From positions 494,469,675 to 494,533,674 of the forward strand of contig NC_133618.1 in assembly GCF_048593235.1 (NCBI RefSeq): 64,000 nucleotides of DNA. Reading direction: 5' to 3'. Each line of letters starts with the position of its first letter. Positions within the stretch are counted from its first letter, which is position 1. Below the pieces are notes generated by a model. That model did not search any database and had not been told where the DNA came from. It saw only the letters and a list, made by a program, of their open reading frames with translations. Position numbers and translations under genes: made by a program. The stretch is from Sminthopsis crassicaudata. Taxonomy: Eukaryota. Shown piece after piece: positions 8,008 through 56,819 of the stretch.

Positions 8008-8018
8008 ATATATATACA

Positions 8019-8055
<37 letters not shown>
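8008..8055. repeat. (TA)n microsatellite
   Basis: Direct reading. Confidence 0.9.
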
Positions 8056-18726: not shown

Positions 18727-18866
18727 CCAGATTCTAAGGACTGTCCCTGAGTGATGACAGTCACAGCAAAACTTGCAATATTTCTGTAGGCCAGGACAAG
18801 TTACTTGGTGATGCAATATATGTGGCTGGGCTCTGGAATGATCTTGGGACAACCCCAGGCTCCTGC
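18727..18866 (-). pseudogene. Degenerate WAP-domain exon resembling WFDC3 domain 2
   Basis: ctcctgcag acceptor. CPKIIPEPSHIYCIT in one frame joins VTCPGLQKYCKFCC in another; the recalled human WFDC3 domain is [31 protein letters not shown]. Several Cys residues are lost. Lower boundary uncertain. Confidence 0.55.
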
Positions 18867-22317: not shown

Positions 22318-22455
22318 CTCTAGGTGGCACAGAAAATAGAGCACAAGCCTTGAAATCAGGAGGACCTGAGTTCAAATTTGACTTCAGACACTTAATACTT
22401 CCTAGTTGTGTGACCCTAGGCAAGTCACCTAACCAATTGTCTCAGGGAAAAAAAA
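22318..22455 (+). mobile_element. Marsupial SINE (WSINE1-like)
   Basis: ctaggtggcacag...ggaggacctgagttcaaat...gcaagtcac followed by an A-tail. Confidence 0.8.
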
Positions 22456-23563
22456 GAAGATACAATGAAGTAGAATACCATAGTGGGCTAAAAAGAGATT
22501 TTGGCAAAAATTTGCATAGGCCAGGGCAGATTTATCCCTTTATCAATACTCAATTTGTGCTAACTTACATGATTTTAAGGCCCTATGGTTTGAGGGCATT
22601 TTTTTTTTCCTTACTGTTTTTGTTTTAACCTTCTCAGATCTGCAAGAAACTAAAAGAGCCAAACCATTATTCCTCTTAATTTTTAAAACATATTTATTAA
22701 ATAAACATTTAAATCATTAAAAGTTGAATTGCTGTCTTTTACTGGGCATTTTTTCCTCCAAAATTGAATTATCCTCTAAAAAAAAGAAAAATAATTTTAA
22801 AAAATCAACAAATATAGTTTTTATGTCTGACAAATACAACATTCCACCCTGACAGCCCCCACCCTACAGGGCTCCATAGACAGGCAAGAGCCAAGTATCC
22901 TTCACCTTCTGATCCTCAGGCCCATTAGTTATCTTTCAGGTACTCAAAGAGAGTTCAGCTTCCTTTTAGTCATCTCATTTACATTTTATAAAAGTATATA
23001 TTAAGTACCTGTGATGAGGTTAGTGGCAGTCAGAGTTAAAATAACAGGTTTTTTCATGAAAAAATTCATGAAACTCTGAATTATTAATTGGCAAGAATGA
23101 AAGTTTATTGTTGGAAAGAAAGCAAGTTTTGCTGAGACTGACTTCTTTAGTGGCAAAGTCCTCTTAGGGAAATGGAGTCTGGCACTGAGAAGAGAATGCC
23201 TTCTCAGTGGGCAGAGGGTCCCAGCAGCTGAGCAAGCTACTTTAGGCCTTCTACAAGTAGTGAGTTTAAGGAAACCTATTATATGGGTAGCTCCTGGTAG
23301 GGGGTTGAGACAACTTAAGCTGATCAGACCAGGATTTCTCAATTGAATGAGAATTAAAATTTCAAAAAGATAAATGGGAGTTGATTTGTCCTTGAATAGT
23401 GTTGCTTCTCTCATCCTGGGAGGATGGGCCCTCTCTCTAGACTCCTTAGAGCCTGGGAGATCCTGATCTCTCAAATCAAAAAGGGGACACAATTTAATTT
23501 TAAAGGGAACAGTTTCTCTCCCCCTTCACCTGCTATTAAGTAATATTGTCAGGCAATAATACC

Positions 23564-23594
<31 letters not shown>

Positions 23595-24015
23595 TTTTTA
23601 ACTCAAGAAGTTACATTCTATTCAAAGAAAATACATATCCATAAAAATAAATACCAAAAACATGTATACATGCATTATACACATATGGAGGAGGGAAGGA
23701 GAGAGACCAGGAAGACCAAAACCACCAGAGTGAATCAAGTAAAGTTCAACTGCTGTAGGAAATAGCACTCTATCTGGAAGAAAACTGGGAATTGATCATA
23801 AATTTGGGCTATGATAATCTGTGGCAGGAAATGGTGGTGGAATGTTGGGAGCACAGTCTTCTCTACCTGCCACAACCTTAACCTGCTCCAAGGACATACT
23901 TACTATACACAACTTCCAAACTCATCCACCTCCATTGAAACCAGGAAGATACTGACCAGAATCAAATCCCCAGTACAGAAGAATGTTCATTGACCGGACA
24001 ACAGGAATTCAGGAG

Positions 24016-24168
24016 GTTTTTTGTTTGTTTGTTTTTTCCTGAGACTGGGGTTAAGTGACTTGCCCAGGGTCACACAGCTAGGAAGTGTTAAGTGTCTGAG
24101 ACCAGATTTGAACTCGGGTCCTCCTGAATTCAAGGCTGGTGCTCTATCCACTGCCACTTAGCTGCCCC
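24016..24168 (-). mobile_element. Marsupial SINE (WSINE1-like)
   Basis: Reverse-complement SINE with TSD aattcaggag (24006-24015 and 24169-24178). Confidence 0.9.
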
Positions 24169-25574
24169 AATTCAGGAGTTCTTGACCTTGACCTTGACAG
24201 TGGCTGGGCCAGACTCATGTCCATGTTCAGGAAGGCAAGGCTGGCTAGGCCCCACCAGGACATCAAGTCTAAGTCATCCAAGATCTCGTTTTCTCTACAA
24301 TATGGCAGAAGGTGGAATAGAAGGGGTAGAAGACGGCTGAGGATGGAGTTGGAGGAGTTTCTGGGGGTTCTTGCCTCTCAGGGTAGGTGTAAAGGACATA
24401 ATGGGGAAAGAAAAACTGGACAGAAACAGAAGCAGAGCAAAAAAACCCTCATGGGCAGATTTACAAAGGAAATTTAACCTCATGGTTTGATATAATAACT
24501 TGGCTTTCTGATTGGATACAGTATTATGGGGTTTCCAAAGAGCTCCATAGGGGTGGCACTATAAGGAAACTCCACTTGAACAAAAGGCTTACTTAGGCCT
24601 GAGATGGCCCTGTCTGTGCCCTTCCCTACTTGCCTCGGGAATATTACAATTTTATTAGTACTTCAGCTTTTCTCTGCTAACTGGACTAGGATCTCCACCT
24701 ATCCTCTCAACTAGTCCTAGACTATTGTCCCATCTTCCTAATTGGCATCCCTTTATCTAGTCTTTGCCCTCTCCTAGCTTTACATAACTATCAAAACAAT
24801 ATTCCTTAAATCACACATCTGATCATGTTATTCCCCTGCTCAAGAAACTAGTTTCTCCCCATTGCTTGTAGCATAAAACATAAATTAGGCATTTATAGCC
24901 TTTCCTACTAAAATATCCATATATTTTGACCCAGAACTTCACTTTGAAGTGGCAACAGACAATCACAATGTCACAAAACTTGGGTTTCATCACAAGAGAA
25001 ATTAATATGCATGTAGAACTCAAAGAGTTCACAATCAGTATGGAAATCTGCATTTTTACAATAGCAGGACAAAGCAAAGAGGAGATGTCCAAAATCTCTA
25101 CCTAGAGAGGCATGGCTTAGGAGGGGGAAAAAGGTGTAGTAAAGGTAGGGAAAGGATAGAACCCTTCCCAAAGGAAAGGAGCAGGTAAAAACAAAAACTA
25201 GCATTCTTTTCCCTGGGAACTGCTGGACTATAAAGATGGGATGGTCTGCTCATCTACAAGGGCCTCAACTGCACAAGCAATTTCTCAGTCTAGTGTAGAT
25301 TGAATGGCACCAAGACACAAGGGAGCCCAGCTTGGGATGCAAACAAAAAATTATGCCATCTAGGGTGGGGGGTGCTTCAACTTGATATATTTGGGGCCTC
25401 CCCTATAGTTTTAGTCCTGTGTTTCTGGAAAATATGACATTTCAAAAAAATAAGTTCAGGGGATCCCTTAAACAGTCTCTGAGAACAAAAGATGAACAAG
25501 CTATGTGCCAGCCCCAGCACTCCTGCTGGGACAAAGTACAAACAAAAACGGTCCTTACTTTTAAGGAACATAGT

Positions 25575-25795
25575 CTATGCCGGGCCTCTTAACCTTTTCC
25601 ACTCACAACCTCTTTTTGCTCAAGAAATTTTTACCGAAACTAAAAAGAAAATGTGAGGATCCTGGATATGCGGGTATTATAAAGTAAATATACAAATCAA
25701 GCATTCATGATACCATAATTCATGATCCTACATTCAGTTACGGGCCCCCCACGGGACGAAAACTACCGCTTAACAAGCTGGGCTCTGTACTACGG
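25575..25795. mobile_element. Possible non-autonomous DNA transposon remnant (hAT/MER-like)
   Basis: Imperfect inverted ends gccgggcctcttaacc / gcttaacaagctgggc around an AT-rich core. Confidence 0.35.
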
Positions 25796-26019
25796 GGAGG
25801 GGATGTTAGGTGGTCCAGGTCAAACCACGGAGCCCGGAGTGTTGTAAATTCCCTTCGTGTGTAGTCTGAAAAATAAAAAGCAATTATAAACATTTTTAAT
25901 AAAATATGTATTTAGTGGCCGGTCCACAGATCACTATTGTCTTGAACAGATCTTTATGCCTCCAAAGCTCTTCTCTTTTATCCCTTAGCTTCAATTCGGA
26001 GAGGAAACGAGGCCGCGGA

Positions 26020-41500: not shown

Positions 41501-44500
41501 GAAACAAATGAGGGAGATGAGGTGAAGGTTTTCACACAATTCAGTTGGATTCGAGGGGCAGTACTGGTGAGAATCCCAAATGTTTTAATTAACTGGGGAG
41601 AAGAGATAGTCAAGAAGATTAATATTCACCATTGACTTTGTGTGATACATTGTTTCAAATAACAAAAAAATTTTATGCAGTATACAAATACCACTAAATA
41701 TAGAATTAACCTTTGATCCCCCAGTCCCTGAAAATAGGTATGGAAAACAATTTTTAAAAAAGAGAGATATTATTAGTGGTGGTACAGATTATGTTACACT
41801 TGAATAATTTTCTGTTTGTTAAAAGAAAGGAAACATAAATACTTAACTTGAAATGTTAATAGCAACATTGTCAATTATGTTCGGTGTAAATTTTGTACTG
41901 GGATTATACCTCATTTTACAGATGGGGAAACTGATCTATACAACAGTTTAGCCAAGGCCACAATGACAATGTAACCAGTGGCTGCTAGTCTAACTGCTCT
42001 GAGCAAAAATGAAGTCTTGACTACTGATCTTGAACAATCACTTTTATCTATTCTCTACTAGGTGGAAACCAAAATCCTGTGAACCAATTCGGAGAGAGGG
42101 TCCTAAGGTATATTATTTGACTATGACATTATTATGACATTAGTAGGTCCCCAACGACCCTGGAGAGTTACTTTCTGTCTGCTATATATCAGGAAAAGGG
42201 GGAGAATCTTGTCTTCCTCTGTGGGTATCCCGATTTCTGAGGTGAATCAACAGTTCTTGTTTTTATTACAAATTGCTTTTTTCAAAAGAAATTTGAGATA
42301 CAGGGAGCAGGGGTATTGGTGTAATCATTTTGTAAGTTAGTAAAATCATGAAAGGAGAAGTCAGTTGACTTTCTGTGATTTATTTCAATTCTCATTGATG
42401 TTCTTCTGAAGAGGAATGTTATCTCTTACTTTTATCTATAAACTAGGAGTCTTTACATCTAGCTACAAGCTGCCTGCTATTGTTCATCTTTTGTCCACTG
42501 AAACTAAATTCCTTGAGGACAAGAAACCAAAATATTTATGAATCCTTATTCACAGAGCTGGGCATGTGGTAAATGATCAGAATATACCTGTTGAGTAAGT
42601 GTTTAAAAAGTAACAACCATTTCAGAAAGAACCATAGACCTCAAGTGAAGATGACCTTGCCTTCAAATGCCAGCACAATTAAGCAACTAATTAAAGTTGG
42701 ACTCTATCTAAATTACCTTTTAGTACTAAAGAGAACACTTGATCCACCTTATCTCACATTGTTTTAGAAGGAGTTTTCCTCTTACCTTTTGAAAGTAGCC
42801 TTCAGCTAGAAATATCAAGCATTCACCTCTTCTTTGATTCAAGAAGCACCAAAACTTAATGAAAAGATCACTGGATGTGGATTCCAGTTTTCAACTTGGC
42901 CACTTTGTAGCTGTGTGACTGACCAAATCATTTCTTGGTTCTAAGCTTCAATTTCTTTATCCACAAAATATGGACAGTGATAACACTTATACCTTCCTGC
43001 TTCAAAAACATGTGATAAAAACAGAGGATGTTGTAATTAACTAATTAGAGGTCAAGGTGGCATTTGTGGTTCTGCCCAACCTGCTTACCTTCTACTTCTC
43101 TGCTCTTTACACAGTGGGACCCAGCTCGGCTGAATGAATCCACCACCTTTGTGCTGGGCTCTAGGGCCAACAAGTAAGAAGTTGGACTCTGACACTTGTG
43201 GGAGGGGGGGTGGCACAAGGGTCCCACAACTGTCACCCTGCTGGGAAAACCCTGATTCAGTCCTCTATTGATTATTGTTTCAGGGCCCTTGGCATGGGAG
43301 GCACTAGAGGGAGGATCTATATCAAGCACCCACATCTTTTTAAGGTGAGTGGCATAACTTCCCCAGAACATTCCCTTCTGGAGTAGGAAGGAACAGTTGT
43401 CAGGAAAGGTAGCCTAAAGGAGCTGCCCATGACCATCCTGTCCTGGCTGTGCAGGGCAGAGAAAACTGAGTGGGAAATAAAGAGGCATCTTCTAAGTCTC
43501 AGCATGGGAGCTTAGGCAAGCTGCTTCATACTCTGGGCCTCTGTTTCCTTATTTGTGAAATTCAACACTGGACAAGGTCCTATCTCTGATGTGCTAGAAT
43601 TTCTATGAAAATGTGAAGAGCCAGGGCCAACTTTTTCAGTCCACCACATGCCACAGCGGGTGTGCTTTTCTACTGCGTTCCTGCCCAATTTCCCTTCCTT
43701 AAAAGCTCATTCTCACCCAGACTCTCATTGTTATCATCTGTTCTCCCCTTTTCCTCCTTTCCTTCCCTCTATCTTCCCAATCCTATCTACAGTCTGGAAA
43801 GCTAGAATTCAGGTGAGAATCTGATGCCATCAGAAATGTGGGACAAAGGAAAAACTTAATTGTTTAGAAAATCTTTGTTATTTTGCTTTATTCTAATTGG
43901 GTTTTGTTTTGTTGTGAGTGGGATTATAAAAGGCTGAGGGAATCCTAGGGAAAGAATGAAAAAGATCAAGAGCTACAGGGTTGGCACTAGCATCACCTCA
44001 TAGGAGATACACTCACCAATACATGGTAAGTTCATGCTCCCATAGAAATCCAATAAGAATGGAAAGGCAGCCTAGCCTGATGGTGCAAAAAGAAAAATGC
44101 AGAATTAAGAGATTAGTTCAGATCCTACTTCCCACTTTAGCTATATGGCTCTTTTATTTTTGAGCATCAGTTTCCTTATCACTAAAAATAGATTAATCCT
44201 ACTTACTCCAGCCATGTCATAAGAGTTGTAAGCTTTTTATGAAACTTAATATTATGGAAATAAGAATTTTTAAAAGCTAAGCATATCTCCCTTTTTAATC
44301 TTCTCGCCCAAACTATTTTTCCTCCAAATTTACTTCAAAGTTTCCTGTTTGTCCAAATTACTTTAGAAGAACACTTTACAAAGATAACAGTAAGGATTTG
44401 TTTGGACTTGGCATTTCTTAAGCACGGCAATCCAACCCACCTAGCCCTGACATACCTGAGAGGTTTACCACACCCTTAAACAGACATAGCCCATGACTTC

Positions 44501-46939
44501 ACCCTACCCCAAAGGATAGCCTGTTCTTGAAACCACTTGTGCTTTAAAAATTAATAGGGTTGAGGGAAGGATGTAGCCTTACCCCTAGGAGACTCTCTGC
44601 TTAAGAGGAGTTGATGGGGAACTACTGATGTAAAAGACCCAAGGATTGCCTGTGGCTACTTGAGACCAGGACAAGACTATCTTTCTCCATGAGATCTGCC
44701 AGAGGGAAAATGGCTTGGGGACATGGATCAGGAGAAGGTCAGACCAGGCTGAACTCTCTATCCTGTGGTTCCCTTCCCTACAGTATGCCGCTGACCCGCA
44801 GGACAAGCACTGGCTAGCAGAACAGCACCACATGAGGGCCACTGGTGGCAAAATGGTGAGTCTCCTCTCCATGGGCTGTTCTCCTGAGAAAGGATCCCTT
44901 GGGATCAGGGGTCAGGCTTTGTGGTGTTGAAAGAAAAGTTCATTTGTCAGGTGTGATATGGAGGATGGCAGGGAAGAGCTTCTGACCCTGACAAAGAAAC
45001 ACACGTCTTCAGCTTCCAGATTGTAAGTCTACAGGTCATCAATCTAGAGCTAAAAAAAAAAGACTTAGGAAATGATCTTATCTCATCCCCTCCTTTTACA
45101 GTTTACTAAAGCACAAAATGAAGATCAAAAGTGGGATTGGAACCCAGATCTTTTGTCTCTAGAATTAGTGCTCTTTTAACTATTGCATAAATGGCATAAT
45201 TCCACTCTTAAATTGTGGCTCTTTGTTGCTAGGTAACTTTAGACAAGTCACTTAACTTCTTGGAACCTCAGTTTCTTCGACTATAAAATATATTTCCTAT
45301 TTCATAAGATTGTTAGGAGGAAAGCTCTTTAAAAACCTTAAAATACTAAAGACCTACTTCATGCTATCTGCTTCATAAGGTTGTTAGGAAGAAAGCTCTT
45401 TGAAAACCTCAAAATACTAAAGAAACGAGAGCAGGAATACCTGCTATTTTACTGATATTGTGTTCGAGAGAAAATAAAAGTATCTTTGCTATTGAGGAAT
45501 TTAAATTCTTTTGAGGAAAACATCCTTATATAAGAGAATAGCAATAAAAATGATAGTCACCTCAGACACTTAATACTTCCTAGCTGTGTGACCCTGGGCA
45601 AGTCACTTAACCCCAATTGCCTCAGCCAAAAATAGAACAACAACAAACTCAGGAAGGAGGGGAGAATGGTCAGTGTTACATTTTACAAAGAGATTAAGTT
45701 GGATGAATACTGAGCAAAGGCCATCAAATTGCTGGTGAAGAGATATTTTGTAAGTTTGGAGAGAGCAGTTTCAGTTAGTTGATGTCAGAAGCCAAATTGC
45801 AAATAGTTAAGAAGTGAATGAGGAGAGGAAATAGAATTATCAAGTATAGCTACTTGATCTAGGAGTTAAGCTGTTAAAGAACGGAGAAAAATAACATCAA
45901 AGCTTGAGTGGGTGGCAGAGTCAGGTAAGGACATGTTATAATTTGGAGAGAAGAATCTAATAAATAGGGAAAGACTTGAAAATTAGAGAAAGTGGGATAT
46001 TCTATTTCCCTTACTTTTCCTAATTCTTCTAGACTCTCGGGGTTAGAAAGGACCTTAGAAGTCCATCCAGCCCCTATCTGAGGCATATCCTGAACAATTA
46101 ATAGCTTAAATCCCTCCTCTTGCAGGAAAGTTGCTACCTTTTGGAGAAACACATTTCACTTTCAAATAGCTAAAGTGTTTTGTTTTGTTTTTTTCTGAGG
46201 CTGTGGTTCAGTGACTTGCCCAGGGTCACACAGCTAGGAAGTGCTAAGTGTCTGAGACCAGATTTGAACTCAGGTCCTCCTGAATTCAAGGCTGGTGCTC
46301 TATCCACTGCACCACCTAGCTGCCCCATAGCTAAAGTATTTTAGAAAATATTCTTTATATTGAACATGGACCTCTAATACTCCACATTTGTATTATTGTT
46401 CCTTCTGGGGTCAAGAAGACTAAATCTAATTCTTCTTGCATATAACAGTCTATGTGACTTTTCTGTCCCCCAGTCTACCTGCTTTTGAGACTGGGCACGT
46501 CACTAGACTAAAGTTTCTCCCAAGCCTCCCTCTCTCATTCGGGAAGCAGTGAAGGAAACCTAAGACCCCTGGTAGCTTTGACCATTCTCCTTGCTTCTGT
46601 ATCTATAGGCCTATCTCCTTATTGAAGAGGACATTCGAGATCTAGCTGCTAGTGATGATTACAGGTGAGAAACCCCTAGTCCCAGCCACAAAATCCTCTT
46701 GTTGCTCCCAGTGGCAAATCCCTTTTCTAAACATGGTCCTTCATCTTTACTATCCTGTTCTTCTGTCCCTTTCCCTCTCACCCCCAACTCGTCTCCCCAG
46801 GGGCTGCCTGGATCTGAAGATGGAAGAATTAAAGCCTTTTGTTCCTCCTTCCTGGATGGCAGAGAAGATGAGGAAATACATGGAAACACTCAGGACTGAG
46901 AATGAACAGCGTCCTAATGAAGTGCCTCCTGAGACATGA
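26731..46939 (+). CDS. DNTTIP1: Deoxynucleotidyltransferase terminal-interacting protein 1 (MiDAC complex subunit), 13 coding exons, 329 aa
   Basis: Exons 26731-26835, 27011-27081, 28114-28210, 36963-37061, 40377-40445, 40742-40798, 41137-41195, 42062-42107, 43115-43173, 43284-43344, 44784-44855, 46609-46664, 46801-46939. All GT-AG, total 990 nt. Peptides NPWNIMIKHRQVQRRGRRSQ, FTDPAISMDLLRAVLQPSINEEIQ, RKGRPP (AT-hook), ALGMGGTRGRIYIKHPHLFKYAADPQDKHWL. AATAAA at 47197. Confidence 0.97.
28848..28876. repeat. (GATA)n microsatellite
   Basis: Direct reading. Confidence 0.9.
29556..29596. repeat. (CA)n microsatellite
   Basis: Direct reading. Confidence 0.9.
33027..33158 (-). mobile_element. Marsupial SINE (WSINE1-like)
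   Basis: Reverse SINE flanked by TSD ggtaaatcactttt. Confidence 0.85.
33720..35870 (-). mobile_element. LINE-2 fragment including RT-region remnants
   Basis: Minus ORF 34173..34619 reads LLNPLHSGFQIYYYTEITTSKVINDLLVVKSNGIFSILTPLDLSVVDDTVEH, a decayed L2/CR1-type RT motif (QSGF..HSTETAL.KV.NDLL...LDLSAAFDTVDH). Confidence 0.75.
35886..36058 (-). mobile_element. Marsupial SINE (WSINE1-like)
   Basis: Reverse SINE with a (gtt)n tail and TSD ggagtaaaagtgttg. Confidence 0.88.
36559..36720 (+). mobile_element. Marsupial SINE (WSINE1-like)
   Basis: ggggcagctaggtggcacaatggatagagcacc...ccccaattgcctcagc followed by a long A-tail. Confidence 0.9.
37600..38890 (-). mobile_element. LINE-1 3'-region fragments, reverse orientation
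   Basis: Reverse complements of the L1 3' UTR and ORF2 C-terminus seen elsewhere in the window. Boundaries approximate. Confidence 0.65.
39520..39665 (+). mobile_element. Marsupial SINE (WSINE1-like)
   Basis: ggggcagctaggtggtacaatggatagagcacc... Confidence 0.88.
46180..46327 (-). mobile_element. Marsupial SINE (WSINE1-like)
   Basis: Reverse SINE with TSD atagctaaagt. Confidence 0.88.
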
Positions 46940-48326
46940 TGCCTAGCTCCTTGGTTGTCCCTGAAACCTTCAAGTGTCCCTCAGACAGGACTCAAGGCCA
47001 GGTGCCCCCTCTTCTGACTTTTGGCACCTGCCTGGGGGAAGCTACACTGCTGCTCCTGAGCCTGTTCTCCAAGAACATCTTTTACACAGGGCCCAAACTG
47101 GTTTGCAGCTGGTTACTGTTCAGCGCCCCTAAAGAGGCATACTTGGTTTTGTGTTTTTGTGAATTTATTGGGTTGGAAAGCAGTTGAATGCTTTGTAATA
47201 AATACAGATGGTAGAACCTGCTGTGGAGACTAGTATATCTAAATGAGAGCAGCCAAATGCTCTAGAGAAAAGGTGGGTGTAGAAAGGAAGGCTGGTGGAG
47301 GCCCTAAGCTCTCAAGACTGAGACTATTACAATAGTAATACCAACTTACATTTCTATATTGCTTTACATTCATTCAATAAATATTTCTTAAGCACTCCCT
47401 ATTGGCAGAGCACTGTATAAGAGCTAAGGAAAATACATTTTTAAAATGCTCATCCTTTATAATCTTTATCTTACTTCAAGACTTAAAGTATCACTTTATC
47501 CATAGAGCCATCCTTGAGCCCCACCTTAATTAGGTTGATGGGGAACTACTCCCTCCTCAAATTACATGCTTTTCTATATTAGTAGCATGATACAGTGAAG
47601 TGACTACTGGACTTGGAATCATCAAGAACTAGGACTTAATACTTTAATACTAAATCATAGATAGGTCTCAGCACTTACCCATACTGTATTAATATCAAAG
47701 ATCCATCACTATTCATGTGTATCTCCCCATAGAGTATATAAAGTCTTTTAAGGCAAGGGTTTGGGTTTTTTGGTCTTTGTACTCCAGCACATTTTCTTAA
47801 CCATAATTGTGTAATTCATACACAGATAAAATCAAATTGCAGCTAATATTTGAGACATACAAAAGTCAAGAGCTGTGTCATGTTGAATATCCTTTGTGCA
47901 GTAGATAGTAGAAGTAGCATGTATTTCCATTTTACAGATGGGGAAACAGACTTGGAAAGATATAACTTGAAAGTGATAAGTGGGGCTCACACATCCTGAC
48001 TCGGAGATGCACTGTTCGAAATTGCAATAAGGCATGGCCTACTTTGTCTCTTCCCACTTCTATAAGAATGCAGGCTCAAGAGGGAAGGCAAATGGAGTGC
48101 TTTCTTACCTCAGCAACCTTTTGTAACTTATATACCCCAGACAATGGACAAACAATTGATTTCTAATTCTCCAATAGAGGACAGACACAGGACATCCAGA
48201 TGCAAGATCTTGATGGGCACATAGATCCATGGAATAATTGTGGGTATTGTGATGGGCTGCCTCACATTCTAATAAGAGGGTGATTCTGTGTTTTAGAAGT
48301 GGTAATTGAAGATGAGGCTATGAGTT

Positions 48327-48460
48327 GGGGTGGCATAGTGGGTAGAGCACCAGCCTTGAATTCAGGAGGACTGGAGTTTAAATGTGGTCTCAGCCACTTA
48401 ACACTTCCTAGCTGTGTGACCCTGGGCAAGTCACTTAACCCCAGCCTCAGGGAAAAAAAA
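48327..48460 (+). mobile_element. Marsupial SINE (WSINE1-like)
   Basis: ggggtggcatagtgggtagagcaccagccttgaattcaggagg followed later by an A-tail. Confidence 0.85.
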
Positions 48461-49225
48461 GAGCTAAGAGCCCCTCTTTCTCCTTCCTTGCTTCTTAATG
48501 GCCTAGACAGTACAGTGATGGCGGCGACCAAGGCAGCCATGGACAGGACTGTGGCCACATGGCCAACAGCCACCAGTGAAGACAAAACTTTTGGAAAATA
48601 TGATCAACACCTGAAGTATCTAGAAATGAAAGATATTGCAGTATACAAAAGTAGAAACCTAAAGGACTTAAACCAGAAATAGCACTTCAGCCTTATCTGG
48701 ATCAGATCACTTTGAGTAAGCAGCCTACAAATTGGATGCACGTTAAAAAAAAATTAGCAAAGTACAAGAAATTAGAGGCAATGAATTCTTTAGCACAGAC
48801 TAACTACAAGAATATTTCATAAGAGCTGAAATGCATGGGATGGAATTTATCAAACTTATATGCTTCTGTTCTATAAAGGGATGTGGTGCTGCTAATCTAA
48901 GGAGAATCCCAGCCTCCAACTTTGGTTGGATGTATAACTTGGGGTACCCCATGATACTTTGCTAAAACTACCTCCCATAACTTCATCTTATTATATATCC
49001 TGAACCAAGGCTCGGAAAACAGGATCAACCCTGTCTAGAGCAGACACAGGTGACAGGATCTGTTCTTCCGGCCTCCTCCCCCAGGGCTCCATCTTTGACT
49101 CTTTGTTGTAAATGTGCCCTCATCACTTTCATAACCTGTTCTTGAACTTGACTGATAAAGGCTGTTTGTAACCAAAAAGAAGCTCTGAAAAGGAGTCGAG
49201 AAACTGGAAAGACAAGACCTGATCT

Positions 49226-49490
49226 GTAATATTCTTCTCTAAAATGTAATCTCTTGTTGGGGTTTTCTTGGGGTCTCTGGAGGCAGCCTTTGTTTCAGTA
49301 CAGTAATCACCCTAAATGCAGCCAGATATTAAAGTCCAAATCCTTTATTGTCTCTTTCCTCGTCTTGTCTCCTTTCCTACAGCTGGTTAGCTGTCTTAGA
49401 AGCCTTCTGTTGTCTTGGTTCTGAGAGCTTGAGTTCTGGCTTCTGAATCTCCCCAACTGCCTTCTCTGGCTTCTGAATCTCCCCTCATTG
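49226..49490 (-). mobile_element. Probable LTR fragment
   Basis: Starts tgtaat, has AATAAA on the minus strand (ctttatt) and internal duplicated ttctggcttctgaatctcccc. No TSD found. Confidence 0.4.
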
Positions 49491-50779
49491 TCATTTGACA
49501 AGTCACTTGTTCCCATCTATATGAAATTAGTTTGGATGATCTCTTAAGTCCCATTTAAGTATGATGTTCTTTGCTTCTACAGGATGACCCTAAACATACT
49601 GAATATAGGTGGTAGATGAGAAACAGTTTACTCCTGCCATTAACTGACTATAGTCAGTTACTGGATAAGTTACCTTCCTTCTGGACTTCATTTAGTGTTC
49701 TCACCTGTAAGATGAGTTACCCACCTATCACTAGACTTCTTCAAAAGGAATTCAAATGACTAAATGATACACAGGTTTTTTTGGTTGGGGTTTTTTTGCT
49801 GCGCAGTGAGTTGATCTGTGATCCCTTACAACTGCCCTTCTGCAATGGTAGGGGGTCTTTAAAATCTTCATGCATATTTATATCATTCTTTTCTAATATT
49901 TGTAAGGCACTTTCCTCACAACCCCTGTTTAGTAGTATAAGTATGATGGACAGTTTACAGATGAGAAAAGTGCAAAGACATCTCGGATTACATAGTTTGT
50001 AAGTAAATAAGCCAGAATAGGAAAGCTAGTCGTCTGACTCCAGTTTCAGCACTATCCAGTATCATGCAGTCCTCCAGCTTAAAATCTAGGAGTCACAACT
50101 CTGGCAGATGAAAGTGTTGGGACTTTTCCAAGTGTTAACCGCCACTCAGTGTAAACGGAGAGACCACTTGCAAACAGCAAGGTGCAAATAAACTAAGTAC
50201 GGGGTAAAGTGTAGGGAATCGGAGGGAAGGCTCTAAGGAGGGATTTGGAAACGCCTCCGGTAGGTGAGATTTAGGTGAAGAAGCTTGCGGGCCTTGATGA
50301 GGAGGGAGAGAATTTCACGAAAGACGGAAAGCCACAAAAAAAAAAAAAAAATTCTGAGCCGAAATTGACCTTCTTGTCCGGGGAACGGCAAGGAGGCCAA
50401 TGTCTCTGGTTGGAAGGGTGGGACACGCTCCAAGCTCCCCCGTTCTGTGGGGAGTCCAGGCTCCAGTGCTGCCGGGTGAGCATCTCTAGAACGGGGAGGG
50501 CTGAGCAGGGCTTTCTTCCTCCCCAAGCCCACCGGGGTTCCCAGCCCTCTCCAGAATGAGTAGCGGTTTCGGGTGGACAGCGGGCGGGGCCTGCTGGGCA
50601 CGCAGCCTCAGGTGACCATTCAGGTCTTGGACGGGATCTTCCAGTTTCCTTTACTCCAGCTTCTCGGCTGTAGATTTAGGAGCCCAGGCTCAGGAAGTGT
50701 CCCAGCCAGACTTGTTTGAATTCACAGCTTTCCCACGTGTACTTTTCTGTGGCCCTTTAAGGATCGCGTTTCCCCGAAG

Positions 50780-51000
50780 GCCACCAATCACCTACGAATT
50801 CGTTACCTAGTGGACAGTTCCAGCAGCCAATCGACTTCTCAGGAACGAGCCCCCTCTGGCCAGTCCCGTTGTTCTAGTTGGGTGGGTTTACAAGTTTCTA
50901 GGTTACGAGGCACGTCGGAGCGGTCCATTGGCTGGATCAAACCCAAGCGTATCCCCGATTGGTGGAGGCCGCCGGAGGGTTACAATTCAAACGCGGGCGG
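50780..51000 (+). promoter_or_regulatory. UBE2C G2/M-type promoter: four CCAAT boxes and a CHR-like element
   Basis: CCAAT at 50784 and 50827, ATTGG at 50927 and 50958 (31 bp apart), TTCAAA at 50986-50991 (reverse CHR TTTGAA), all within a CpG island. Confidence 0.75.
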
Positions 51001-51062
51001 CGGGCCTGGAGCCCCGCAGTTGCCGCCAGGGAGTTTCTCTCTTCCTTTATCTCCGGTCCCCC

Positions 51063-53521
51063 ATGGCTTCCCAGAACCGCGACCCCGCTGCTGCCAGCGC
51101 TACCGCCGCCTCCCGCAAGGGGACCGAGCCTGGGGCGGGCGCGGCTCGCGGGTCCGTAGGCAAGAGGTGAGAGTTCCCGAAGCTCGGGGCCGAGGAAGCC
51201 GGAGAGCCTGCGGCCGGGAGGGAGGGAGGCGGGGGAGCGCACTGCCCCCCAGACGGAGGTCGGGCTGGAGCCTGGGGGGCTCGATGGGAGGAGGCCGGGG
51301 TAAGGCCCCCAGTTCTCGGTAACCGAAACTCCCCCCGCCCCTTCTCTGCAGGTTACAGCAGGAGTTGATGACCCTAATGGTGAGTAGGCACTCGCTGCCT
51401 ATTGGTCAGCCCCAGCAGCCCGGAGGCCCCCGCCTCCCGCTCAGCCCCCCACCATCGAGGCAAAGACCCGCTGAAAGCGACCTCGGCCTCCAGACCCGGG
51501 TTCTGTCTTTTACAGGGGGGACCTGGGAGGAATGTGGACTTTTACAACCACCGCTAACTTTGCCCCCCCCCCCGACTGGTCGCTGGACCTCCCACCCCCA
51601 GCTCTGCGCGTGCCCCTCTCCCACCCCCAAAAACGCCAAACCTGAGTGGGCCAGGTTGTCTTTTATTGGGGTCAGTTATAATCACAACAGTATGGCTTTA
51701 GGCTGCAGCCCTTTCACCCGCGGATTCTCCCCGCCGGAAGGCCTGGGAAGGAGCTTCGGGGCCATCTAAAGCCAGGCTCGGCAGCCCACCCCAGAAAATG
51801 CTTATTCTTCTCCGCAGATGTCGGGAGACAAAGGAATTTCTGCCTTCCCGGAGTCGGACAATCTCTTCAAATGGGTGGGAACCATCCACGGGGCAGCTGG
51901 GACGGTGAGCCTCTGGGACTGGAAGTGGGGGGGACCTGCGCAGTGTGCTCTGTATAACTGAACTAAGGGATTGGGTGAGAGGACGCCTGAGGGGTAGAGG
52001 AGAAAGCCCCACCCCCAAAAGTGAAGCTCTTATGTTTGTAACTCTGAGGCTTTCCTGACCATCTCTAACGCCCAGTGACCTCCGGAGGGCAAATGGTAAT
52101 AACGCAGTGTTGTGTACCGGAGGAAAGGGAGACAGGGCACTTTGGCTCCTGCCTTTTTTCCCTTTGGGCCAAAGTGCCTTCTGTAGCTTAGATGTCCCCT
52201 CAAGCTCAGTCCTGCTCCACTCACTTGTTTATTTGGATGTTTCTTCCTCAGGTATATGAAGACCTAAGGTACAAGCTGTCCTTGGAGTTTCCCAGCGGTT
52301 ACCCATATAATGCTCCCACTGTGAAATTTGTCACACCTTGTTACCATCCTAATGTGGACACCCAAGGCAATATCTGTTTGGACATCCTCAAGGACAAGTG
52401 GTCAGCGCTGTATGATGTCAGGACCATCCTACTATCCATCCAGAGCCTGCTGGGAGGTGATGCCTACTGTCTCTTTAGGCTTTCTTCTTTCTCTTCCCCG
52501 GCTCTCCCCTTCTCTTCCCCGGCTCTCCCCTCCTCTTCCCTCTGAGGTTTAAGATTATTACACTTTACTCTCTTTTCACCATCTTCTAACTCACAGAATG
52601 TCAGAAGCCATCTAGCTTAACCATTACTACACTTGTGAGCCTAATTTTTACAGAGCTCCAATTTCCTAGGCAGTTGTTTTTCTGGACTTCCCTTCTAACA
52701 TGTTGTTTCCACCTACAGAGCCCAACATTGATAGCCCATTGAACACACATGCTGCTGAACTTTGGACAAATCCCACAGGTAAATCCTCTGTTAAAACAAG
52801 AACAAACTTTTCCTTAGATGATTTAAAATGAAAACTTCTGTCCTACATAGATTAAACTCTTTGTCCTTGAGAACATTTAGGCAAATGGTGCTGTGGGTAA
52901 AATGATAACTCTTATCATAGTGGTATTCAAAGAGTAGCTATTGCAAAAATCCTAAGAGATCTTTTAACTAAAATATGTTCTTAAGTGAATGGGATAGAGG
53001 GAACCTTAGCAGAAGGAGCTTGTTGTGTATGGGAACAAACACTGAACTTTGGTTAAGAAGAGAATGAGGGGGCAGCTAGGTGGCACAGTGGATAGAGCAC
53101 CAGCCTTGAATTCAGGAGGACCCTAGTTCAAATCTGGTCTCAGACACTTAACACTTCCTAGCTGTGTGACTTTGGGCAAGTCACTTAACCCCAGCCTCAG
53201 GAAAAAAAAAAAGAGAGAGAGAGAATGAATTCTGCTAGCTTCTAGTTTGCCAGATTTGGAGCAAAAGCACTTCCCCTAGAAACGATTAGCATGGAAAGGA
53301 GTGGTCTAGGATCAAGGAAGAAATGGGAGAAAAATTAAAGGAAGGCTACCTCATTCTAAAATTATTAGATTTAATATTAACCCTTTGGGGTTTTGTCAGA
53401 ACACTGGCATGTCCCTGGAAACCCCCAGGCCAGTTGCTTACCTATTTATCTTCTCTCCCCAGCCTTTAAAAAGTACCTGCTGGAAACCTACATGAAGCAG
53501 GTGACTAGCCAAGAGCCCTGA
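51063..53521 (+). CDS. UBE2C: Ubiquitin-conjugating enzyme E2 C (UbcH10), 6 exons, 180 aa
   Basis: Exons 51063-51166, 51352-51379, 51818-51904, 52252-52456, 52719-52778, 53463-53521, total 543 nt. [10 protein letters not shown]...[11 protein letters not shown], catalytic [25 protein letters not shown] at 53706. Confidence 0.98.
53069..53212 (+). mobile_element. Marsupial SINE in UBE2C intron 5
   Basis: ggggcagctaggtggcacagtggatagagcacc with an A-tail and TSD gagaatga. Confidence 0.9.
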
Positions 53522-54292
53522 CCCTGGCTGCCCAGTCTGCCTTCCCTTCATCTTGTGTGTATGTGTATGTGTGTATGTGTGTGTATCTTTTTCTCTTCCT
53601 CATAATGTCTTCTATCTCTTTTCTTCTGTACAGGACTCTGTATCATAGACTTTTCCTTTTTTTTTCCCTCTTAAACTCTAGACTAGTCCTCAATATTAAT
53701 GTATAAATAAATTTTGGTTTGTTTTTTTTTTTTGTTTTGTTTTTAAAGCTGTTGCTGTGTTGTTTGGCTCTCTTTGGCGGAAGGATGGGGAACTGATGAG
53801 CTGTAAACTGAACCTCATTATAGAGGAAACAATTCCCTGGGGTCTGAGCTAGTCTCTCTAGCAAGCAGTGTACAATGTCAGAGCTAGATAGGACATTAGA
53901 ACATAGGCCATGGAATATTTTGAATTAGAAGGAATCCTGGAGCTGGATTAACTAGCTGATCCAAACCACTTTTCTGTCACAGATGGGAAAATGGAGAACT
54001 AGACATAGCTAAATCAGTGGACCAGAAATTGAGTCTTTTACAATGTAGTTTTGTTCCTTCATCATTATCCTACCTTCCAGCTGTTTTATATTTGTAGTTG
54101 CACTTGAGCCTTATTCTTGAAAATAGTTCCTTCTTATAATGCCCCCTGCTTTGCCCTCCTGGGATTTGAACTGGGAAAGAATATGACTTAGCAACCTTAC
54201 ATTGAAGTGGTTCCCTGGTGTAGAAGACTGACATCTGCTGACTTCTCAAGGGGAAAGGGGAGAGATGTTCCTGTAGTAGGCTACATTCAGCT

Positions 54293-54780
54293 TCATGCTA
54301 CTATACAATGAGATTGAAGCCTGTCGGGAGCCCGGGCACAGCATCCCCGAGGACTCCTCCCAGCTGAGCTCTCAGGGCTGTGTTCTAATGCTTCAGGATC
54401 TCCCACTGTGGCCTCCACACTCCACACAGGTACATTGACCTTGGTCTCCATCTCCAAAAGCATCTCTTCCAGGCGTTGCCCCCATTGGGCCAGTTCTTCA
54501 GGCAGCTCCCCAGCTCTTTCAGAGGTCCTTCCACTGGGCCGTCTCAGACTCCAGCCCTTGGGCCCAAAGGATATAACCCCAGTATTAACCAACTGGGTCC
54601 CAGAGGCTGGAGATGGCAGGGGGAAAATCTGGCTGAGGTCATGGGCCCGACCCAGATCCTGCAGGAAAATTTCCAGGGCAGACAAACAGAGCACCCAGAT
54701 TCGCTCCAGCTCCATTTTCACCTCTTCCTCCTGTCTGCCCCCTGGATCTGTGAGTTCGGCCAGAAGCTGGTTCCGAAGGC
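54293..54780 (-). CDS. RGS9BP (R9AP)-like protein, exon 2 (C-terminal 162 aa, ends in CaaX)
   Basis: Polypyrimidine tract plus caacag acceptor. Open frame GLRNQLLAEL...ELERIWVLCLSALEIFLQDLGRAHDLSQIFPL...QLVNTGV...EEMLLEMETKVNVPVWSVEA...GCCARAPDRLQSHCIVA*. Recalled human R9AP segments: [26 protein letters not shown]...FPL...LVRTGV and EMIDNMEMKVNVPRWTVQA. Confidence 0.85.
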
Positions 54781-55079
54781 CTGTTGGGGGGGGAGGGAAA
54801 GAGAAGGCAAAGAACAGGGGCAGCCACAGGGGATAACAAACGGGGCATTAGATCTCAGTGGCCACAGTGAGAATTTTAAGAGCTCCGGCCTCACTTTGAT
54901 AGATTGAAATAATTCCTAAGGTCCTAGGATCTAGAGAACGGCTAGCAAGTGTGACAGGTATCCTTAGAGGGCCATTTGGCCCACCTCCCTTTACAGAAAG
55001 GAATGCCAGGCAATAAAACAGAAGCAGAATTCGAACTCCGCGTCTGCTCCAAAGGCAGTGCTCTTCCCACTCCGCCGCT

Positions 55080-55620
55080 TGGAAGCCCCCGGCCCTCCCA
55101 CACCTAGCGGACTCCTGCCCCTTCCTTAAGCACCGCCTCCCGCTCCTCCGTCCCCCTTCCCCCTCCCCTCGGTACCCTGTCTGCTCACCCAGACTCAACT
55201 CGAGGCCCCGGCGGCCGCTCTCCTCCAGAGCCCGGCGCAGCCTCCTCCCGTCGGCCGAGCTGCCCACTCCCAGCACCAACTGCCTGTAGCTGGCAGTGAA
55301 CCTGTTGAGCGCTTCGTACGCCGCCCGGCACTCGGCCACAGCCTCCCGGGATTCCCGGGCCTTCTCCCCTGGCCCCGCGCTCCGCATGCCTCCCTCGGTT
55401 TTGGCAATCTCGGCCTTGGCCGCAGCCTGGAGTAGCAAAGCTCGGGCTCTTTCTCTTTCAGCCTCCGCCCTTGCCAGCGGCCAACCCCCTCCCCACCCCT
55501 CCGGGACCCGGAGAAGGCGGAGACAGCCCGAAAGCTCCGGCCCACCAGCTCCCTCTACGCTGCGTGGTCCGACTAGCCTGCGGTTTCCACCTTCCCGCTA
55601 ACCTAGCCCTCTCGGGTTTG
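55080..55620. promoter_or_regulatory. CpG island over the 5' end of the RGS9BP-like gene
   Basis: Locally dense CpG covering exon 1 and about 230 bp upstream. Confidence 0.65.
55189..55387 (-). CDS. RGS9BP (R9AP)-like protein, exon 1
   Basis: First in-frame ATG at 55387, inside a CpG island. MRSAGPGEKARESREAVAECRAAYEALNRFTASYRQLVLGVGSSADGRRLRRALEESGRRGLELSL, then a G|GTGAG donor (phase 1, in frame with exon 2). Recalled R9AP: [36 protein letters not shown]. Confidence 0.85.

Positions 55621-56783: not shown

Positions 56784-56819
<36 letters not shown>

What the first reader, a model, noticed from the sequence alone, without database searches (positions are those of the whole stretch)
54293..54350. 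Transmembrane anchor replaced by Cys-Cys plus a CaaX motif (CIVA)
Seen: the protein ends ...SPRGCCARAPDRLQSHCIVA* with no hydrophobic stretch long enough to span a membrane. Established: R9AP is tail-anchored by a TM helix, R7BP is anchored by a palmitoylated C-terminal Cys pair, and C-aliphatic-aliphatic-Ala is a farnesyltransferase-type CaaX. Inference: this paralog may use a third targeting mode, farnesylation plus reversible palmitoylation as in H-/N-Ras, which could allow regulated shuttling of RGS complexes.
Basis: partly seen in the sequence, partly recalled or inferred. Interest (0 to 1): 0.75.

Follow-up and report, generated by a model that had tools for sequence, protein, structure and literature searches.

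The report
Lipid-anchored third RGS9 anchor-protein paralog
This marsupial gene is the little-studied "R9AP-like" relative of the membrane anchors for RGS proteins. In jawed vertebrates from sharks to marsupials its usual membrane-spanning tail is replaced by a conserved cysteine pair plus a prenylation (CaaX) signal, which points to a Ras-style lipid anchor that has not been described or tested.

Summary
A two-exon gene on the minus strand (CDS 55387..55189 and 54780..54296, stop 54295..54293) encodes 228 aa ending RGCCARAPDRLQSHCIVA*. No segment is hydrophobic enough to span a membrane.

A public-run contig shows the predicted GT..AG splice. It then runs unspliced through the stop codon for about 540 nt, so that transcript has no alternative last exon with a TM helix.

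The gene is the ortholog of the annotated "RGS9-binding protein-like" (R9AP-like) gene. It lies between TNNC2 and UBE2C, as in koala, opossum, bilby and degu, and is under purifying selection (dN/dS 0.13-0.21).

Cys at -16, -15 and -4 is identical in marsupials, frogs and caecilians, and turtles keep it with one extra Cys at -5. In a tree built without the tails, the window protein sits in a 100/100-supported clade of 40 representatives: 29 have upstream Cys plus CaaX and none has a TM helix. All 36 TM-bearing relatives lie outside it. CIVA is in a published experimental prenylation-positive set.

Lipidation, RGS binding and shuttling are untested. The gene family is known, but I found no paper describing this anchor. 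In this scan only a first-reader note on this same window exists. Verdict: new variant of a known kind, moderate interest.

The parts
55189..55387 (-). Exon 1 coding part (Met1 to first base of codon 67). It encodes helix 1 and most of helix 2 of the three-helix bundle.
   Evidence: Sequence and frame. Donor GT at 55188/55187. The splice is confirmed by the contig joint. Another contig covers 55270-55469, so the transcript reaches at least 55469.
54781..55188 (-). Single coding intron, 408 nt, GT..AG.
   Evidence: Run X17 contig joins 55188/55189 to 54779/54780, 'skips 408, CT..AC' on the + strand. The same one-intron structure is found in koala, opossum and bilby and is reported for R9AP-like genes (PMC5795056).
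54293..54780 (-). Exon 2 coding part plus stop codon (54293-54295). It encodes residues 67-228.
   Evidence: It is 86-89% identical to the koala, bilby and opossum 'RGS9-binding protein-like' proteins.
54410..54442 (-). Conserved KVNVPVWSVEA motif at the end of the fourth (SNARE-like) helix. It is the family hallmark shared with TM-anchored R9AP.
   Evidence: Alignments. W186 is invariant in 40 sequences. The model shows helix 156-180 with pLDDT above 90.
54338..54343 (-). Cys213-Cys214 pair (positions -16/-15), the candidate S-palmitoylation site.
   Evidence: Same positions in marsupials, frogs, caecilians and turtles. It aligns with the juxtamembrane Cys of TM-anchored R9AP, R9AP-B and invertebrate homologs.
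54296..54307 (-). CaaX box Cys225-Ile-Val-Ala228, the candidate farnesylation site.
   Evidence: CIVA is listed as prenylation-positive in PMC9231725 S1 File. X = Ala or Ser is described as the farnesylation signal in PMC5795056.
53754..54292 (-). 3' UTR, at least this far, contiguous with exon 2. It converges on the 3' end of the UBE2C-like gene.
   Evidence: X17 contig record 5 covers 53754-54779 without a joint. No AATAAA/ATTAAA occurs on the minus strand before 53375. The contig ends at a genome-encoded A-rich tract (53708-53748 on the minus strand), so the true 3' end is unresolved.

Best explanation
This is the marsupial ortholog of the vertebrate 'R9AP-like' gene, the third paralog of the RGS9 anchor protein family. 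Shown here: it is intact, spliced, transcribed and under purifying selection. It keeps the family's syntaxin-like core (three-helix bundle, a fourth heptad helix and the KVNVPxW[ST]VEA motif) and has no transmembrane helix. Its disordered tail carries a Cys pair at -16/-15 and a CaaX box (CIVA), an arrangement conserved across jawed vertebrates. Inferred mechanism: Cys225 is farnesylated in the cytosol because X = Ala. The protein then meets membrane-bound palmitoyl-transferases that acylate Cys213/214, giving a two-signal anchor of the H-/N-Ras type on the cytoplasmic face of membranes. By homology with R9AP and R7BP, the helical core would recruit an R7-family RGS-Gbeta5 complex to the membrane. 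Because palmitate is reversible and farnesyl is not, loss of palmitate would be expected to move the protein between plasma membrane and endomembranes. It would not be expected to enter the nucleus as R7BP does, because the tail has no polybasic stretch. In evolutionary terms the TM helix of a tail-anchored ancestor was replaced once, before cartilaginous and bony fishes split, and the juxtamembrane cysteines were kept.
For: Gene model and tail. Splice junction and read-through of the stop in a transcript contig. Orthologs and shared TNNC2 / UBE2C synteny. dN/dS is 0.13-0.21 over the CDS, and the two coding differences in run X17 are both synonymous. Tail census, with Cys at -16/-15/-4 in all marsupials, frogs and caecilians and in turtles with an extra Cys at -5. 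Taxon names. In the tail-free ML tree the window protein lies in a 100/100 clade of 40 rows with 29 Cys+CaaX and 0 TM. Its sister is the TM-bearing R9AP-B group (93/77), and hemichordate homologs carry a TM. The CC pair aligns with the juxtamembrane Cys of TM paralogs. The AlphaFold model (pLDDT 79, pTM 0.70) has helices 6-39, 48-77, 85-118 and 156-180, and the tail after residue 185 is disordered. The best fold matches are closed syntaxins (Sso2, Sso1, syntaxin 1; probability 1.00, TM up to 0.72 by target). The PDB profile hit is the syntaxin-12 Habc domain, E 4.6e-4. CIVA, CMVS, CLLS, CTIA, CTVS, CTLS and CVVL are all in a prenylation-positive experimental set. R9AP-like is described with one coding intron and unknown function.
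Against: No lipid modification, membrane binding or RGS binding has been measured for any member of this clade. The Cys pair lies 10 residues upstream of the CaaX cysteine, much further than in H-/N-Ras (2-5 residues), so its acylation is less certain than the prenylation. The degu ortholog lacks a CaaX in both the annotated model and the unspliced reading, which ends ...VCCRET*. Eleven of 40 clade representatives lack a -4 Cys: percomorph fishes end ...GCVG, and several are probably truncated gene models. Some orthologs have unusual X residues (CLMP, CMLH, CLLH, CVRF). The yeast reporter data are for yeast FTase in a different protein context. The tissue of expression in the marsupial is unknown because run identities are coded, and the run that gave the spliced contig is of unrecorded type.
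Confidence: 0.7

Rival explanations
1. Single-lipid anchor. Only one of the two signals is used: either prenylation alone, with the Cys pair serving another role, or palmitoylation alone as in R7BP, with the CaaX not processed.
For: R7BP works with palmitate plus a polybasic patch and no prenyl group. The Cys pair is 10 residues from the CaaX Cys. Skates and birds keep only a CC directly at the CaaX (CCTIA, CCVVL), so the distal pair is dispensable in some lineages.
Against: Both elements keep exact positions (-16/-15 and -4) over tetrapod evolution while the residues between them change. Lineages that lost the distal pair gained a Cys next to the CaaX Cys, so a second Cys is nearly always present: 29 of the 40 clade rows have Cys+CaaX, and no clade row has a CaaX without an upstream Cys. 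The marsupial tail has no polybasic patch to support a single lipid.
Confidence: 0.17
2. The conserved cysteines are not lipidated at all. They might bind a metal, form disulfides or make a protein contact, and the protein is soluble or is recruited only through partners.
For: Fish and coelacanth tails are very Cys- and His-rich (for example five Cys plus three His in the last 17 residues of the zebrafish protein), which can resemble metal-binding sites. There are no experimental data.
Against: Conservation is anchored to distance from the C-terminus (Cys at exactly -4, followed by aliphatic residues), which is the signature of CaaX recognition and not of a metal site. The tail is predicted disordered. 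Every other family member is membrane anchored.
Confidence: 0.07
3. The gene is decaying in mammals, as shown by its loss in placentals, and the marsupial tail is a relic without function.
For: It is lost in almost all placentals (PMC5795056). The degu copy has a divergent tail and a long branch.
Against: Intact ORFs of 224-228 aa occur in four marsupials separated by dS of 0.26-0.52, with dN/dS 0.13-0.21. The splice sites are conserved. A spliced transcript exists. The tail cysteines and IVA are invariant in all four.
Confidence: 0.03
4. The gene model is incomplete, and the real protein ends in a TM helix supplied by an alternative last exon.
For: No canonical poly(A) signal lies close to the stop. 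The degu annotation uses an extra 3' exon.
Against: The transcript contig runs unspliced from exon 2 through the stop for about 540 nt. No hydrophobic open segment exists on that strand in the intron or within 1.7 kb downstream, which already overlaps the UBE2C-like gene. Independent annotations in three marsupials, seven amphibians and many other taxa end at the same CaaX. The extra degu exon encodes no TM either.
Confidence: 0.03

Closest known systems
R9AP (RGS9BP), the tail-anchored membrane anchor of RGS9-1-Gbeta5L in photoreceptors
   Same: Clear sequence homology: the profile built from this clade hits hagfish and caecilian R9AP at about E 1e-46. It has the same core of three helices plus a heptad helix, and the same KVNVP.W.VEA motif. 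Its juxtamembrane Cys aligns with the Cys pair here.
   Different: R9AP ends in a TM helix of about 25 residues (tail hydropathy 2.7-2.9). This protein has none (1.26) and ends in CaaX. The two form separate, well-supported clades. This gene has one coding intron versus none reported for R9AP.
R7BP (RGS7BP), the palmitoylated anchor and shuttle for R7 RGS-Gbeta5 in neurons
   Same: It has no TM helix, and membrane attachment is through a C-terminal Cys pair. Its tail CCLVSS was noted by its discoverers to resemble a CCaaX with one residue too many (PMC2171691).
   Different: R7BP has a polybasic stretch that doubles as a nuclear-localisation element, is not prenylated and is insensitive to FTI and GGTI. 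Here there is a genuine CaaX at the right distance from the C-terminus, no polybasic stretch, and the Cys pair is 10 residues upstream. I did not recover full-length R7BP sequences, so its phylogenetic relation to this clade was not tested.
H-Ras / N-Ras (also RhoB and paralemmin): the two-signal membrane anchor of CaaX farnesylation plus upstream Cys palmitoylation
   Same: It has a CaaX with X = Ala or Ser plus upstream cysteine(s) in a disordered tail. Bird orthologs end CCVVL/CCTVL/CCGLL, and unlabelled database sequences that group with them end CCRVL; to my knowledge this resembles the RhoB type.
   Different: The protein fold is unrelated (a syntaxin-like helical bundle, not a GTPase). 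The spacing between the palmitoylatable Cys and the prenyl Cys is 10 residues in tetrapods. No lipidation has been shown.
R9AP-like / 'RGS9BP3' as listed by Lamb et al. 2018 (PMC5795056) and a 2025 frog-vision preprint (10.1101/2025.10.31.685797)
   Same: It is this gene family. It has one coding intron, is present in fishes, amphibians and non-placental mammals, and among placentals was found only in the degu. The preprint names the third copy of the RGS9-binding protein RGS9BP3 and says frogs and fishes express three copies in the eye; I take the third copy to be this gene.
   Different: Those papers treat it as an R9AP isoform of unknown function and discuss only the TM segment of R9AP. Their CaaX discussion concerns GRKs. 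The lipid-type tail is not mentioned.

Membership tests
R9AP/R7BP family of R7-RGS membrane anchors (syntaxin-like) | Significant sequence homology to bona fide R9AP | tested here: met
   The profile of this clade hits proteins named R9AP in hagfish and caecilian (P0025, P0026) at E about 3e-46. The exon 2 product is 86-89% identical to annotated 'RGS9-binding protein-like' proteins.
R9AP/R7BP family of R7-RGS membrane anchors (syntaxin-like) | N-terminal three-helix bundle plus a C-terminal heptad/SNARE-like helix | tested here: met
   The AlphaFold model of the koala ortholog (89% identical over exon 2, same length) has helices 6-39, 48-77, 85-118 and 156-180 at pLDDT above 90. The top Foldseek hits are closed syntaxins. 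A PDB profile hit is the syntaxin-12 Habc domain.
R9AP/R7BP family of R7-RGS membrane anchors (syntaxin-like) | Binds the DEP domain of R7 RGS proteins in complex with Gbeta5 | not testable with these tools
   Needs co-immunoprecipitation or a reconstituted GAP assay.
R9AP proper (tail-anchored) | C-terminal transmembrane helix | tested here: not met
   Maximum 19-residue hydropathy is 1.26, versus 2.1-3.2 in the tails of TM relatives. No TM exon lies nearby. The transcript reads through the stop.
R7BP | Polybasic stretch followed by a terminal di-cysteine that is not in CaaX register | tested here: not met
   The last 25 residues hold four scattered Arg, no Lys and no polybasic run. The Cys pair is at -16/-15, and a separate Cys is in exact CaaX register.
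R9AP-like (third paralog, Lamb et al. 2018) | Phylogenetic placement with R9AP-like sequences and one intron in the coding region | tested here: met
   100/100 clade with proteins named R9AP-like from coelacanth, sturgeon, turtle, ratites, amphibians and marsupials. A single phase-1 coding intron is confirmed by a spliced contig.
CaaX-prenylated proteins with a second palmitoylation signal (H-/N-Ras type) | Cys at -4 followed by two aliphatic residues and an X that selects FTase (A, S, M, Q, C) | tested here: met
   The protein ends CIVA. CIVA is in the experimental prenylation-positive set of PMC9231725. The motif is conserved in register in 29 of 40 clade representatives.
CaaX-prenylated proteins with a second palmitoylation signal (H-/N-Ras type) | Upstream cysteine(s) close enough to be S-acylated after prenylation | tested here: inconclusive
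   A conserved Cys pair is present, but 10 residues upstream of the CaaX cysteine. No palmitoylation predictor or assay was available.
CaaX-prenylated proteins with a second palmitoylation signal (H-/N-Ras type) | Demonstrated covalent farnesyl and acyl groups | not testable with these tools
   Needs metabolic labelling, acyl-RAC or mass spectrometry.

The most novel reading that the evidence does not exclude
Jawed vertebrates have a third, so far uncharacterised class of membrane anchor for R7-family RGS-Gbeta5 complexes. In it, the tail-anchor TM helix of an R9AP-type ancestor was exchanged once, before cartilaginous and bony fishes diverged, for a Ras-like prenyl plus palmitoyl module that retains the ancestral juxtamembrane cysteines. 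This would allow an acylation-cycle-controlled distribution of RGS GAP activity that neither R9AP (fixed TM) nor R7BP (palmitate plus polybasic/NLS) provides. The gene was lost in placental mammals, which would explain why it has been overlooked. A corollary is that R7BP's CCLVSS end may be a decayed CCaaX of the same origin.
Probability: 0.5. Interest if true: 0.65.

Novelty: new variant of a known kind. Interest (0 to 1): 0.55.

Why it matters
R7-family RGS proteins (RGS6, 7, 9 and 11) set the speed of G-protein shut-off in photoreceptors, ON-bipolar cells and neurons. Where they act is dictated by their anchors. Textbook accounts list two anchors: R9AP (transmembrane) and R7BP (palmitoylated).

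The comparative data here indicate that most non-placental vertebrates carry a third anchor with a different, potentially regulatable lipid attachment. These include zebrafish, Xenopus, turtles, ratite birds and marsupials. That changes how RGS9/RGS11 localisation should be interpreted in non-mammalian models of vision.

The case also gives a clean natural example of a tail-anchor TM helix being swapped for a CaaX module. It is directly testable with standard tail-fusion, inhibitor and Cys-mutant experiments. Because placentals lack the gene, direct biomedical relevance is limited.

Tried and rejected
- **Pfam:** scanning both exon products gave nothing significant. The best hit was E 0.41 to an unrelated domain, so the family has no matching Pfam model.
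- **PDB:** the sequence search found no R9AP or R7BP structure, only the syntaxin-12 Habc domain. Foldseek E-values were weak (4e-3 or worse), although syntaxins ranked first.
- **Reads:** runs X7 and X8 laid nothing despite their word share. X1 gave an unspliced contig that cannot distinguish DNA from pre-mRNA. Only X17 was informative, and its library type is not on record.
- **Poly(A) signal:** no canonical signal was found on the minus strand between the stop and 53375. The 3' end is therefore unresolved.
- **Alternative TM exon:** rejected.
- **Pseudogene:** rejected.
- **Degu tail as counter-example:** examined. The annotated tail comes from an extra 3' exon, and the unspliced reading keeps a CC but has no CaaX. 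I treat it as relaxed or divergent evolution in the one placental that retains the gene, not as refutation.
- **R7BP relation:** I could not obtain full-length non-human R7BP sequences by reference. Short fragments first suspected to be R7BP (P0089, P0093 and similar) look like exon-limited predictions of another paralog, possibly R9AP-B (not checked by name or tree). The idea that R7BP's tail is a decayed CaaX stays untested.
- **Literature:** searches for any paper linking R9AP-like or RGS9BP to CaaX or prenylation found none.
- **Constraints observed:** I sent no human sequence to any tool, did not touch the N run at 58249-58785, and kept the UBE2C coding exons out of the reads tool.

Full report
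**1. What is in the sequence**

On the minus strand an ATG at 55387 opens a frame that runs to a consensus donor (CTGG|GTGAGC) with GT at 55188/55187. A polypyrimidine tract and an AG precede 54780. From there the frame continues to a TGA at 54295-54293. The joined CDS is 687 nt and encodes 228 aa, ending ...SPRGCCARAPDRLQSHCIVA*. Cys213/Cys214 are at 54338-54343 and the CIVA box is at 54296-54307. The most hydrophobic 19-residue window in the whole protein averages 1.26 on the Kyte-Doolittle scale and lies in a core helix. The tails of TM-bearing relatives score 2.1-3.2.

**2. Is the gene real and is the end of the protein right?**

- I laid public-run contigs on 53530-55900, deliberately leaving out the UBE2C coding exons. 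Run X17 gave a 1138-nt contig that joins 55298..55188/9 to 54779/80..53754. It skips 408 nt with CT..AC ends on the + strand, which is GT..AG on the gene's strand. That is exactly the predicted junction.
- The same contig continues unspliced through the stop codon for about 540 nt. That transcript therefore has no alternative last exon.
- Its two coding differences from the window (54350, 54677) are both synonymous by my codon count. A further contig reaches 55469, upstream of the ATG.
- A six-frame scan of the intron and of 1.7 kb downstream on that strand found no open segment with hydropathy of 1.6 or more.
- No canonical poly(A) signal follows the stop before 53375. The contig ends at a genome-encoded A-rich tract, so the true 3' end is unresolved.
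- Runs X7 and X8 laid nothing, and X1 gave an unspliced contig that could be DNA. The library type of X17 is not on record, so the spliced contig itself is the evidence for RNA.

**3. Identity**

Pfam has no model for this protein. A word-indexed search with the exon 2 product found 'regulator of G-protein signaling 9-binding protein-like' proteins of bilby, koala and opossum (86-89% identity, E about 1e-82 to 1e-85) and of the rodent Octodon degus (59%). The genomic loci of all four show the same order: TNNC2-like gene (160 aa, EF hands), this gene, then a UBE2C-like gene on the opposite strand. The window is collinear with the three marsupial loci over about 12 kb.

Lamb et al. 2018 (PMC5795056, section 2.6) describe three 'R9AP' genes in vertebrates: R9AP, R9AP-B and R9AP-like, with 0, 2 and 1 coding introns. 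They state that R9AP-like is absent from placentals except the degu, and that it is not established how or whether R9AP-B and R9AP-like take part in phototransduction. The present gene fits that description and is its marsupial ortholog. [quoted passage not shown] I take that third copy to be this gene.

**4. Selection**

Codon alignments of the window CDS with koala, opossum and bilby (splice sites recovered exactly) give pairwise dS of 0.26-0.52 and dN/dS of 0.13-0.21 over the whole CDS. For the last 20 codons dN/dS is 0.15-0.55. Within the tail, substitutions fall between the cysteines. Cys213, Cys214, His-Cys225 and Ile-Val-Ala are invariant in all four marsupials.

**5. Conservation of the tail beyond marsupials**

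An alignment-based word search and then a full profile search of 1.84 billion representatives returned 206 relatives.

| Group | Tail ending |
|---|---|
| Frogs | RGCC-x10-CMVS |
| Caecilians | GCC-x10-CLFS |
| Turtles | GCC-x9-CCTAS / CCTLS |
| Coelacanth | CC..C...CVIS |
| Shark | CCIIS |
| Skates | CCTIA |
| Sturgeon / paddlefish | CLMP / CLTS |
| Bonytongue | CMLH |
| Zebrafish (Q504F3, zgc:109913) | CLLS |
| Seahorse | CAWS |
| Rhea, emu, tinamou | CCVVL, CCTVL, CCGLL |

Cys positions counted from the C-terminus are -16, -15 and -4 in every marsupial, frog and caecilian. Turtles have -16, -15, -5 and -4. The intervening residues are poorly conserved. What is held constant is the register relative to the C-terminus, which is what CaaX recognition requires.

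**6. Phylogeny**

I cut the last 30 residues from every sequence so that the trait could not shape the tree. I then built an ML tree of the 83 relatives that cover most of the profile.

- In the careful run the window protein sits in a clade of 40 rows with 100/100 support. That clade contains 29 proteins with upstream Cys plus CaaX, 5 with CC but no -4 Cys (mostly fish tails such as ...GCVG), and 6 with other ends, several of which look like truncated gene models. None has a TM helix.
- All 36 TM-bearing rows lie outside the clade.
- The sister group (93/77) holds TM-bearing R9AP-B-like proteins. Hagfish and caecilian R9AP and a hemichordate homolog also carry TM helices.
- Rooted on the hemichordate, the simplest reading is a single loss of the TM helix at the base of the R9AP-like clade, before cartilaginous and bony fishes diverged.
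- The caecilian Rhinatrema has both a TM-anchored R9AP (P0026) and a CaaX-ended R9AP-like protein (P0008), which confirms paralogy.

**7. How the swap may have happened (inference)**

In a 40-sequence alignment the GCC of the R9AP-like proteins falls in the same columns as the juxtamembrane cysteines that precede the TM helix in the other family members: R9AP-B (RCCRGGQY-TM), an unnamed TM paralog (PCCYPGRR-TM), R9AP (PCDL..-TM) and the invertebrate proteins (RKCVC-TM). The Cys pair therefore looks like an ancestral juxtamembrane feature that was kept when the roughly 22-residue helix was replaced by a short spacer. Many TM paralogs also have a Cys followed by aliphatic residues 6-7 residues from their C-terminus (CVAKLS, CVVKLS, CIALLT). 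An internal deletion plus a slightly earlier stop could have produced a CaaX from that, but this is speculation based on an end-gapped alignment.

**8. Fold**

AlphaFold2 was run on the koala ortholog, which has the same length as the window protein and aligns to it without gaps, using the 40-sequence alignment. It gives pLDDT 79 and pTM 0.70. There are three long helices (6-39, 48-77, 85-118), a low-confidence linker, a fourth helix (156-180) ending in the KVNVPVWSVEA motif, and a low-confidence tail with no long helix from about residue 185. Foldseek ranks closed syntaxins first (Sso2, Sso1, syntaxin 1; probability 1.00, TM up to 0.72 normalised by target, but E only 4e-3). A profile search of PDB sequences finds the syntaxin-12 Habc domain at E 4.6e-4. 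[quoted passage not shown]

**9. Would CIVA be prenylated?**

No predictor was available. The training data of a yeast study (PMC9231725, S1 File) list CIVA in the 'Prenylation (positive)' column. The same column lists CMVS (frogs), CLLS (zebrafish), CTIA (skates), CTLS (turtles), CTVS, CVVL and CTVL (ratites) and CGLL (tinamou). Lamb et al. state that X = Ser or Ala signals farnesylation and X = Leu geranylgeranylation. On that rule marsupials, amphibians and most fishes would be farnesylated and birds geranylgeranylated. These data come from yeast FTase in reporter contexts, so they support the motif as a substrate but do not prove it.

**10. Comparison with the two known anchors**

R9AP is tail-anchored by a TM segment. 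R7BP ends in a polybasic stretch followed by CCLVSS. Its discoverers noted the resemblance to the CCAAX of H-Ras, but with four residues after the last Cys, which should preclude prenylation. They showed palmitoylation-dependent localisation that FTI-277 and GGTI-298 did not affect (PMC2171691).

The present protein differs from both. It has a Cys in exact CaaX register, no TM helix and no polybasic stretch (four scattered Arg in the last 25 residues).

If the protein cycles, I expect it to do so between plasma membrane and endomembranes, as described for H-/N-Ras (my own knowledge, not checked here). I do not expect it to enter the nucleus as R7BP does, because farnesyl is permanent and the NLS-like basic patch is missing.

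**11. Caveats**

- Nothing here shows lipid attachment, membrane binding or RGS binding.
- The Cys pair is 10 residues from the CaaX Cys, further than in Ras proteins.
- The degu protein lacks a CaaX. Its annotated tail comes from an extra 3' exon, and the unspliced reading ends ...VCCRET*.
- Eleven of 40 clade representatives lack the -4 Cys.
- The representative library carries no names, so some rows remain taxonomically unlabelled.
- I did not recover full-length R7BP sequences, so R7BP's relation to this clade is open.

**12. Novelty and verdict**

The gene family is annotated and has been discussed in the literature as R9AP-like. In the searchable literature I found no statement that it lacks a TM helix or carries a CaaX box. 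Database feature annotations could not be checked.

I rate it as a new variant of a known kind: a known anchor family with a different, conserved and testable attachment chemistry. Interest is moderate (0.55). It would be a real surprise for people working on RGS9/R7 anchors in zebrafish, Xenopus or birds. It is predicted from sequence only, and it concerns a gene that placental mammals have lost.

The scan's earlier notes hold only a first-reader note on this same window (s1-181913), which agrees with the gene model.

Noticed in passing
window 50676-53521 (+ strand), 3' UTR to about 53720: A UBE2C-like gene (UQ_con domain in the orthologous loci) converges on the R9AP-like gene. Its AATAAA lies near 53707, and the R9AP-like transcript contig reaches 53754. 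The two 3' ends therefore abut within about 50 nt or overlap. A (TG)n microsatellite sits at about 53555-53590 in the UBE2C-like 3' UTR.
   Followed up: partly
window about 56000-61780 (- strand); N run 58249-58785: A TNNC2-like gene lies upstream of the R9AP-like gene, collinear with the koala, opossum and bilby loci that encode a 160-aa EF-hand protein. A 537-base N run lies inside it.
   Followed up: partly
window 33750-36000: A stretch of about 2.3 kb with strong purine skew on the + strand (GC skew 0.24-0.56, positive AT skew) and no tandem repeat. It is probably one strand of an interspersed repeat, but it was not identified.
   Followed up: partly
L004:16165-17022 (degu locus): The degu R9AP-like annotation spans 9 kb with an intron of about 8 kb, and it adds a short third exon that replaces the native tail. 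Read unspliced, exon 2 ends ...SGCLPTFWVCCRET*, which keeps a Cys pair but has no CaaX. This may reflect relaxed constraint in the one placental that retains the gene.
   Followed up: partly
P0094 (341 aa; unnamed representative in the clade that holds the hemichordate homolog): One member of the otherwise TM-anchored outgroup clade ends ...SRLCTIL, a CaaX with X = Leu and no TM helix. It could be an independent TM-to-CaaX swap or a truncated gene model.
   Followed up: no
P0012, P0106, P0155 (Anabas and two unlabelled, probably fish, proteins): These R9AP-like tails end ...CC..GCVG, with the last Cys at -3 instead of -4. Shortened 'CaX' motifs are reported as prenylatable in the abstract of PMC10541624, so these may not be true losses.
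   Followed up: no
window 26001-28000 and 50001-52000: Two GC-rich segments (GC 0.60 and 0.59 against a background of 0.35-0.42) look like CpG islands. The second coincides with the 5' end of the UBE2C-like gene.
   Followed up: no
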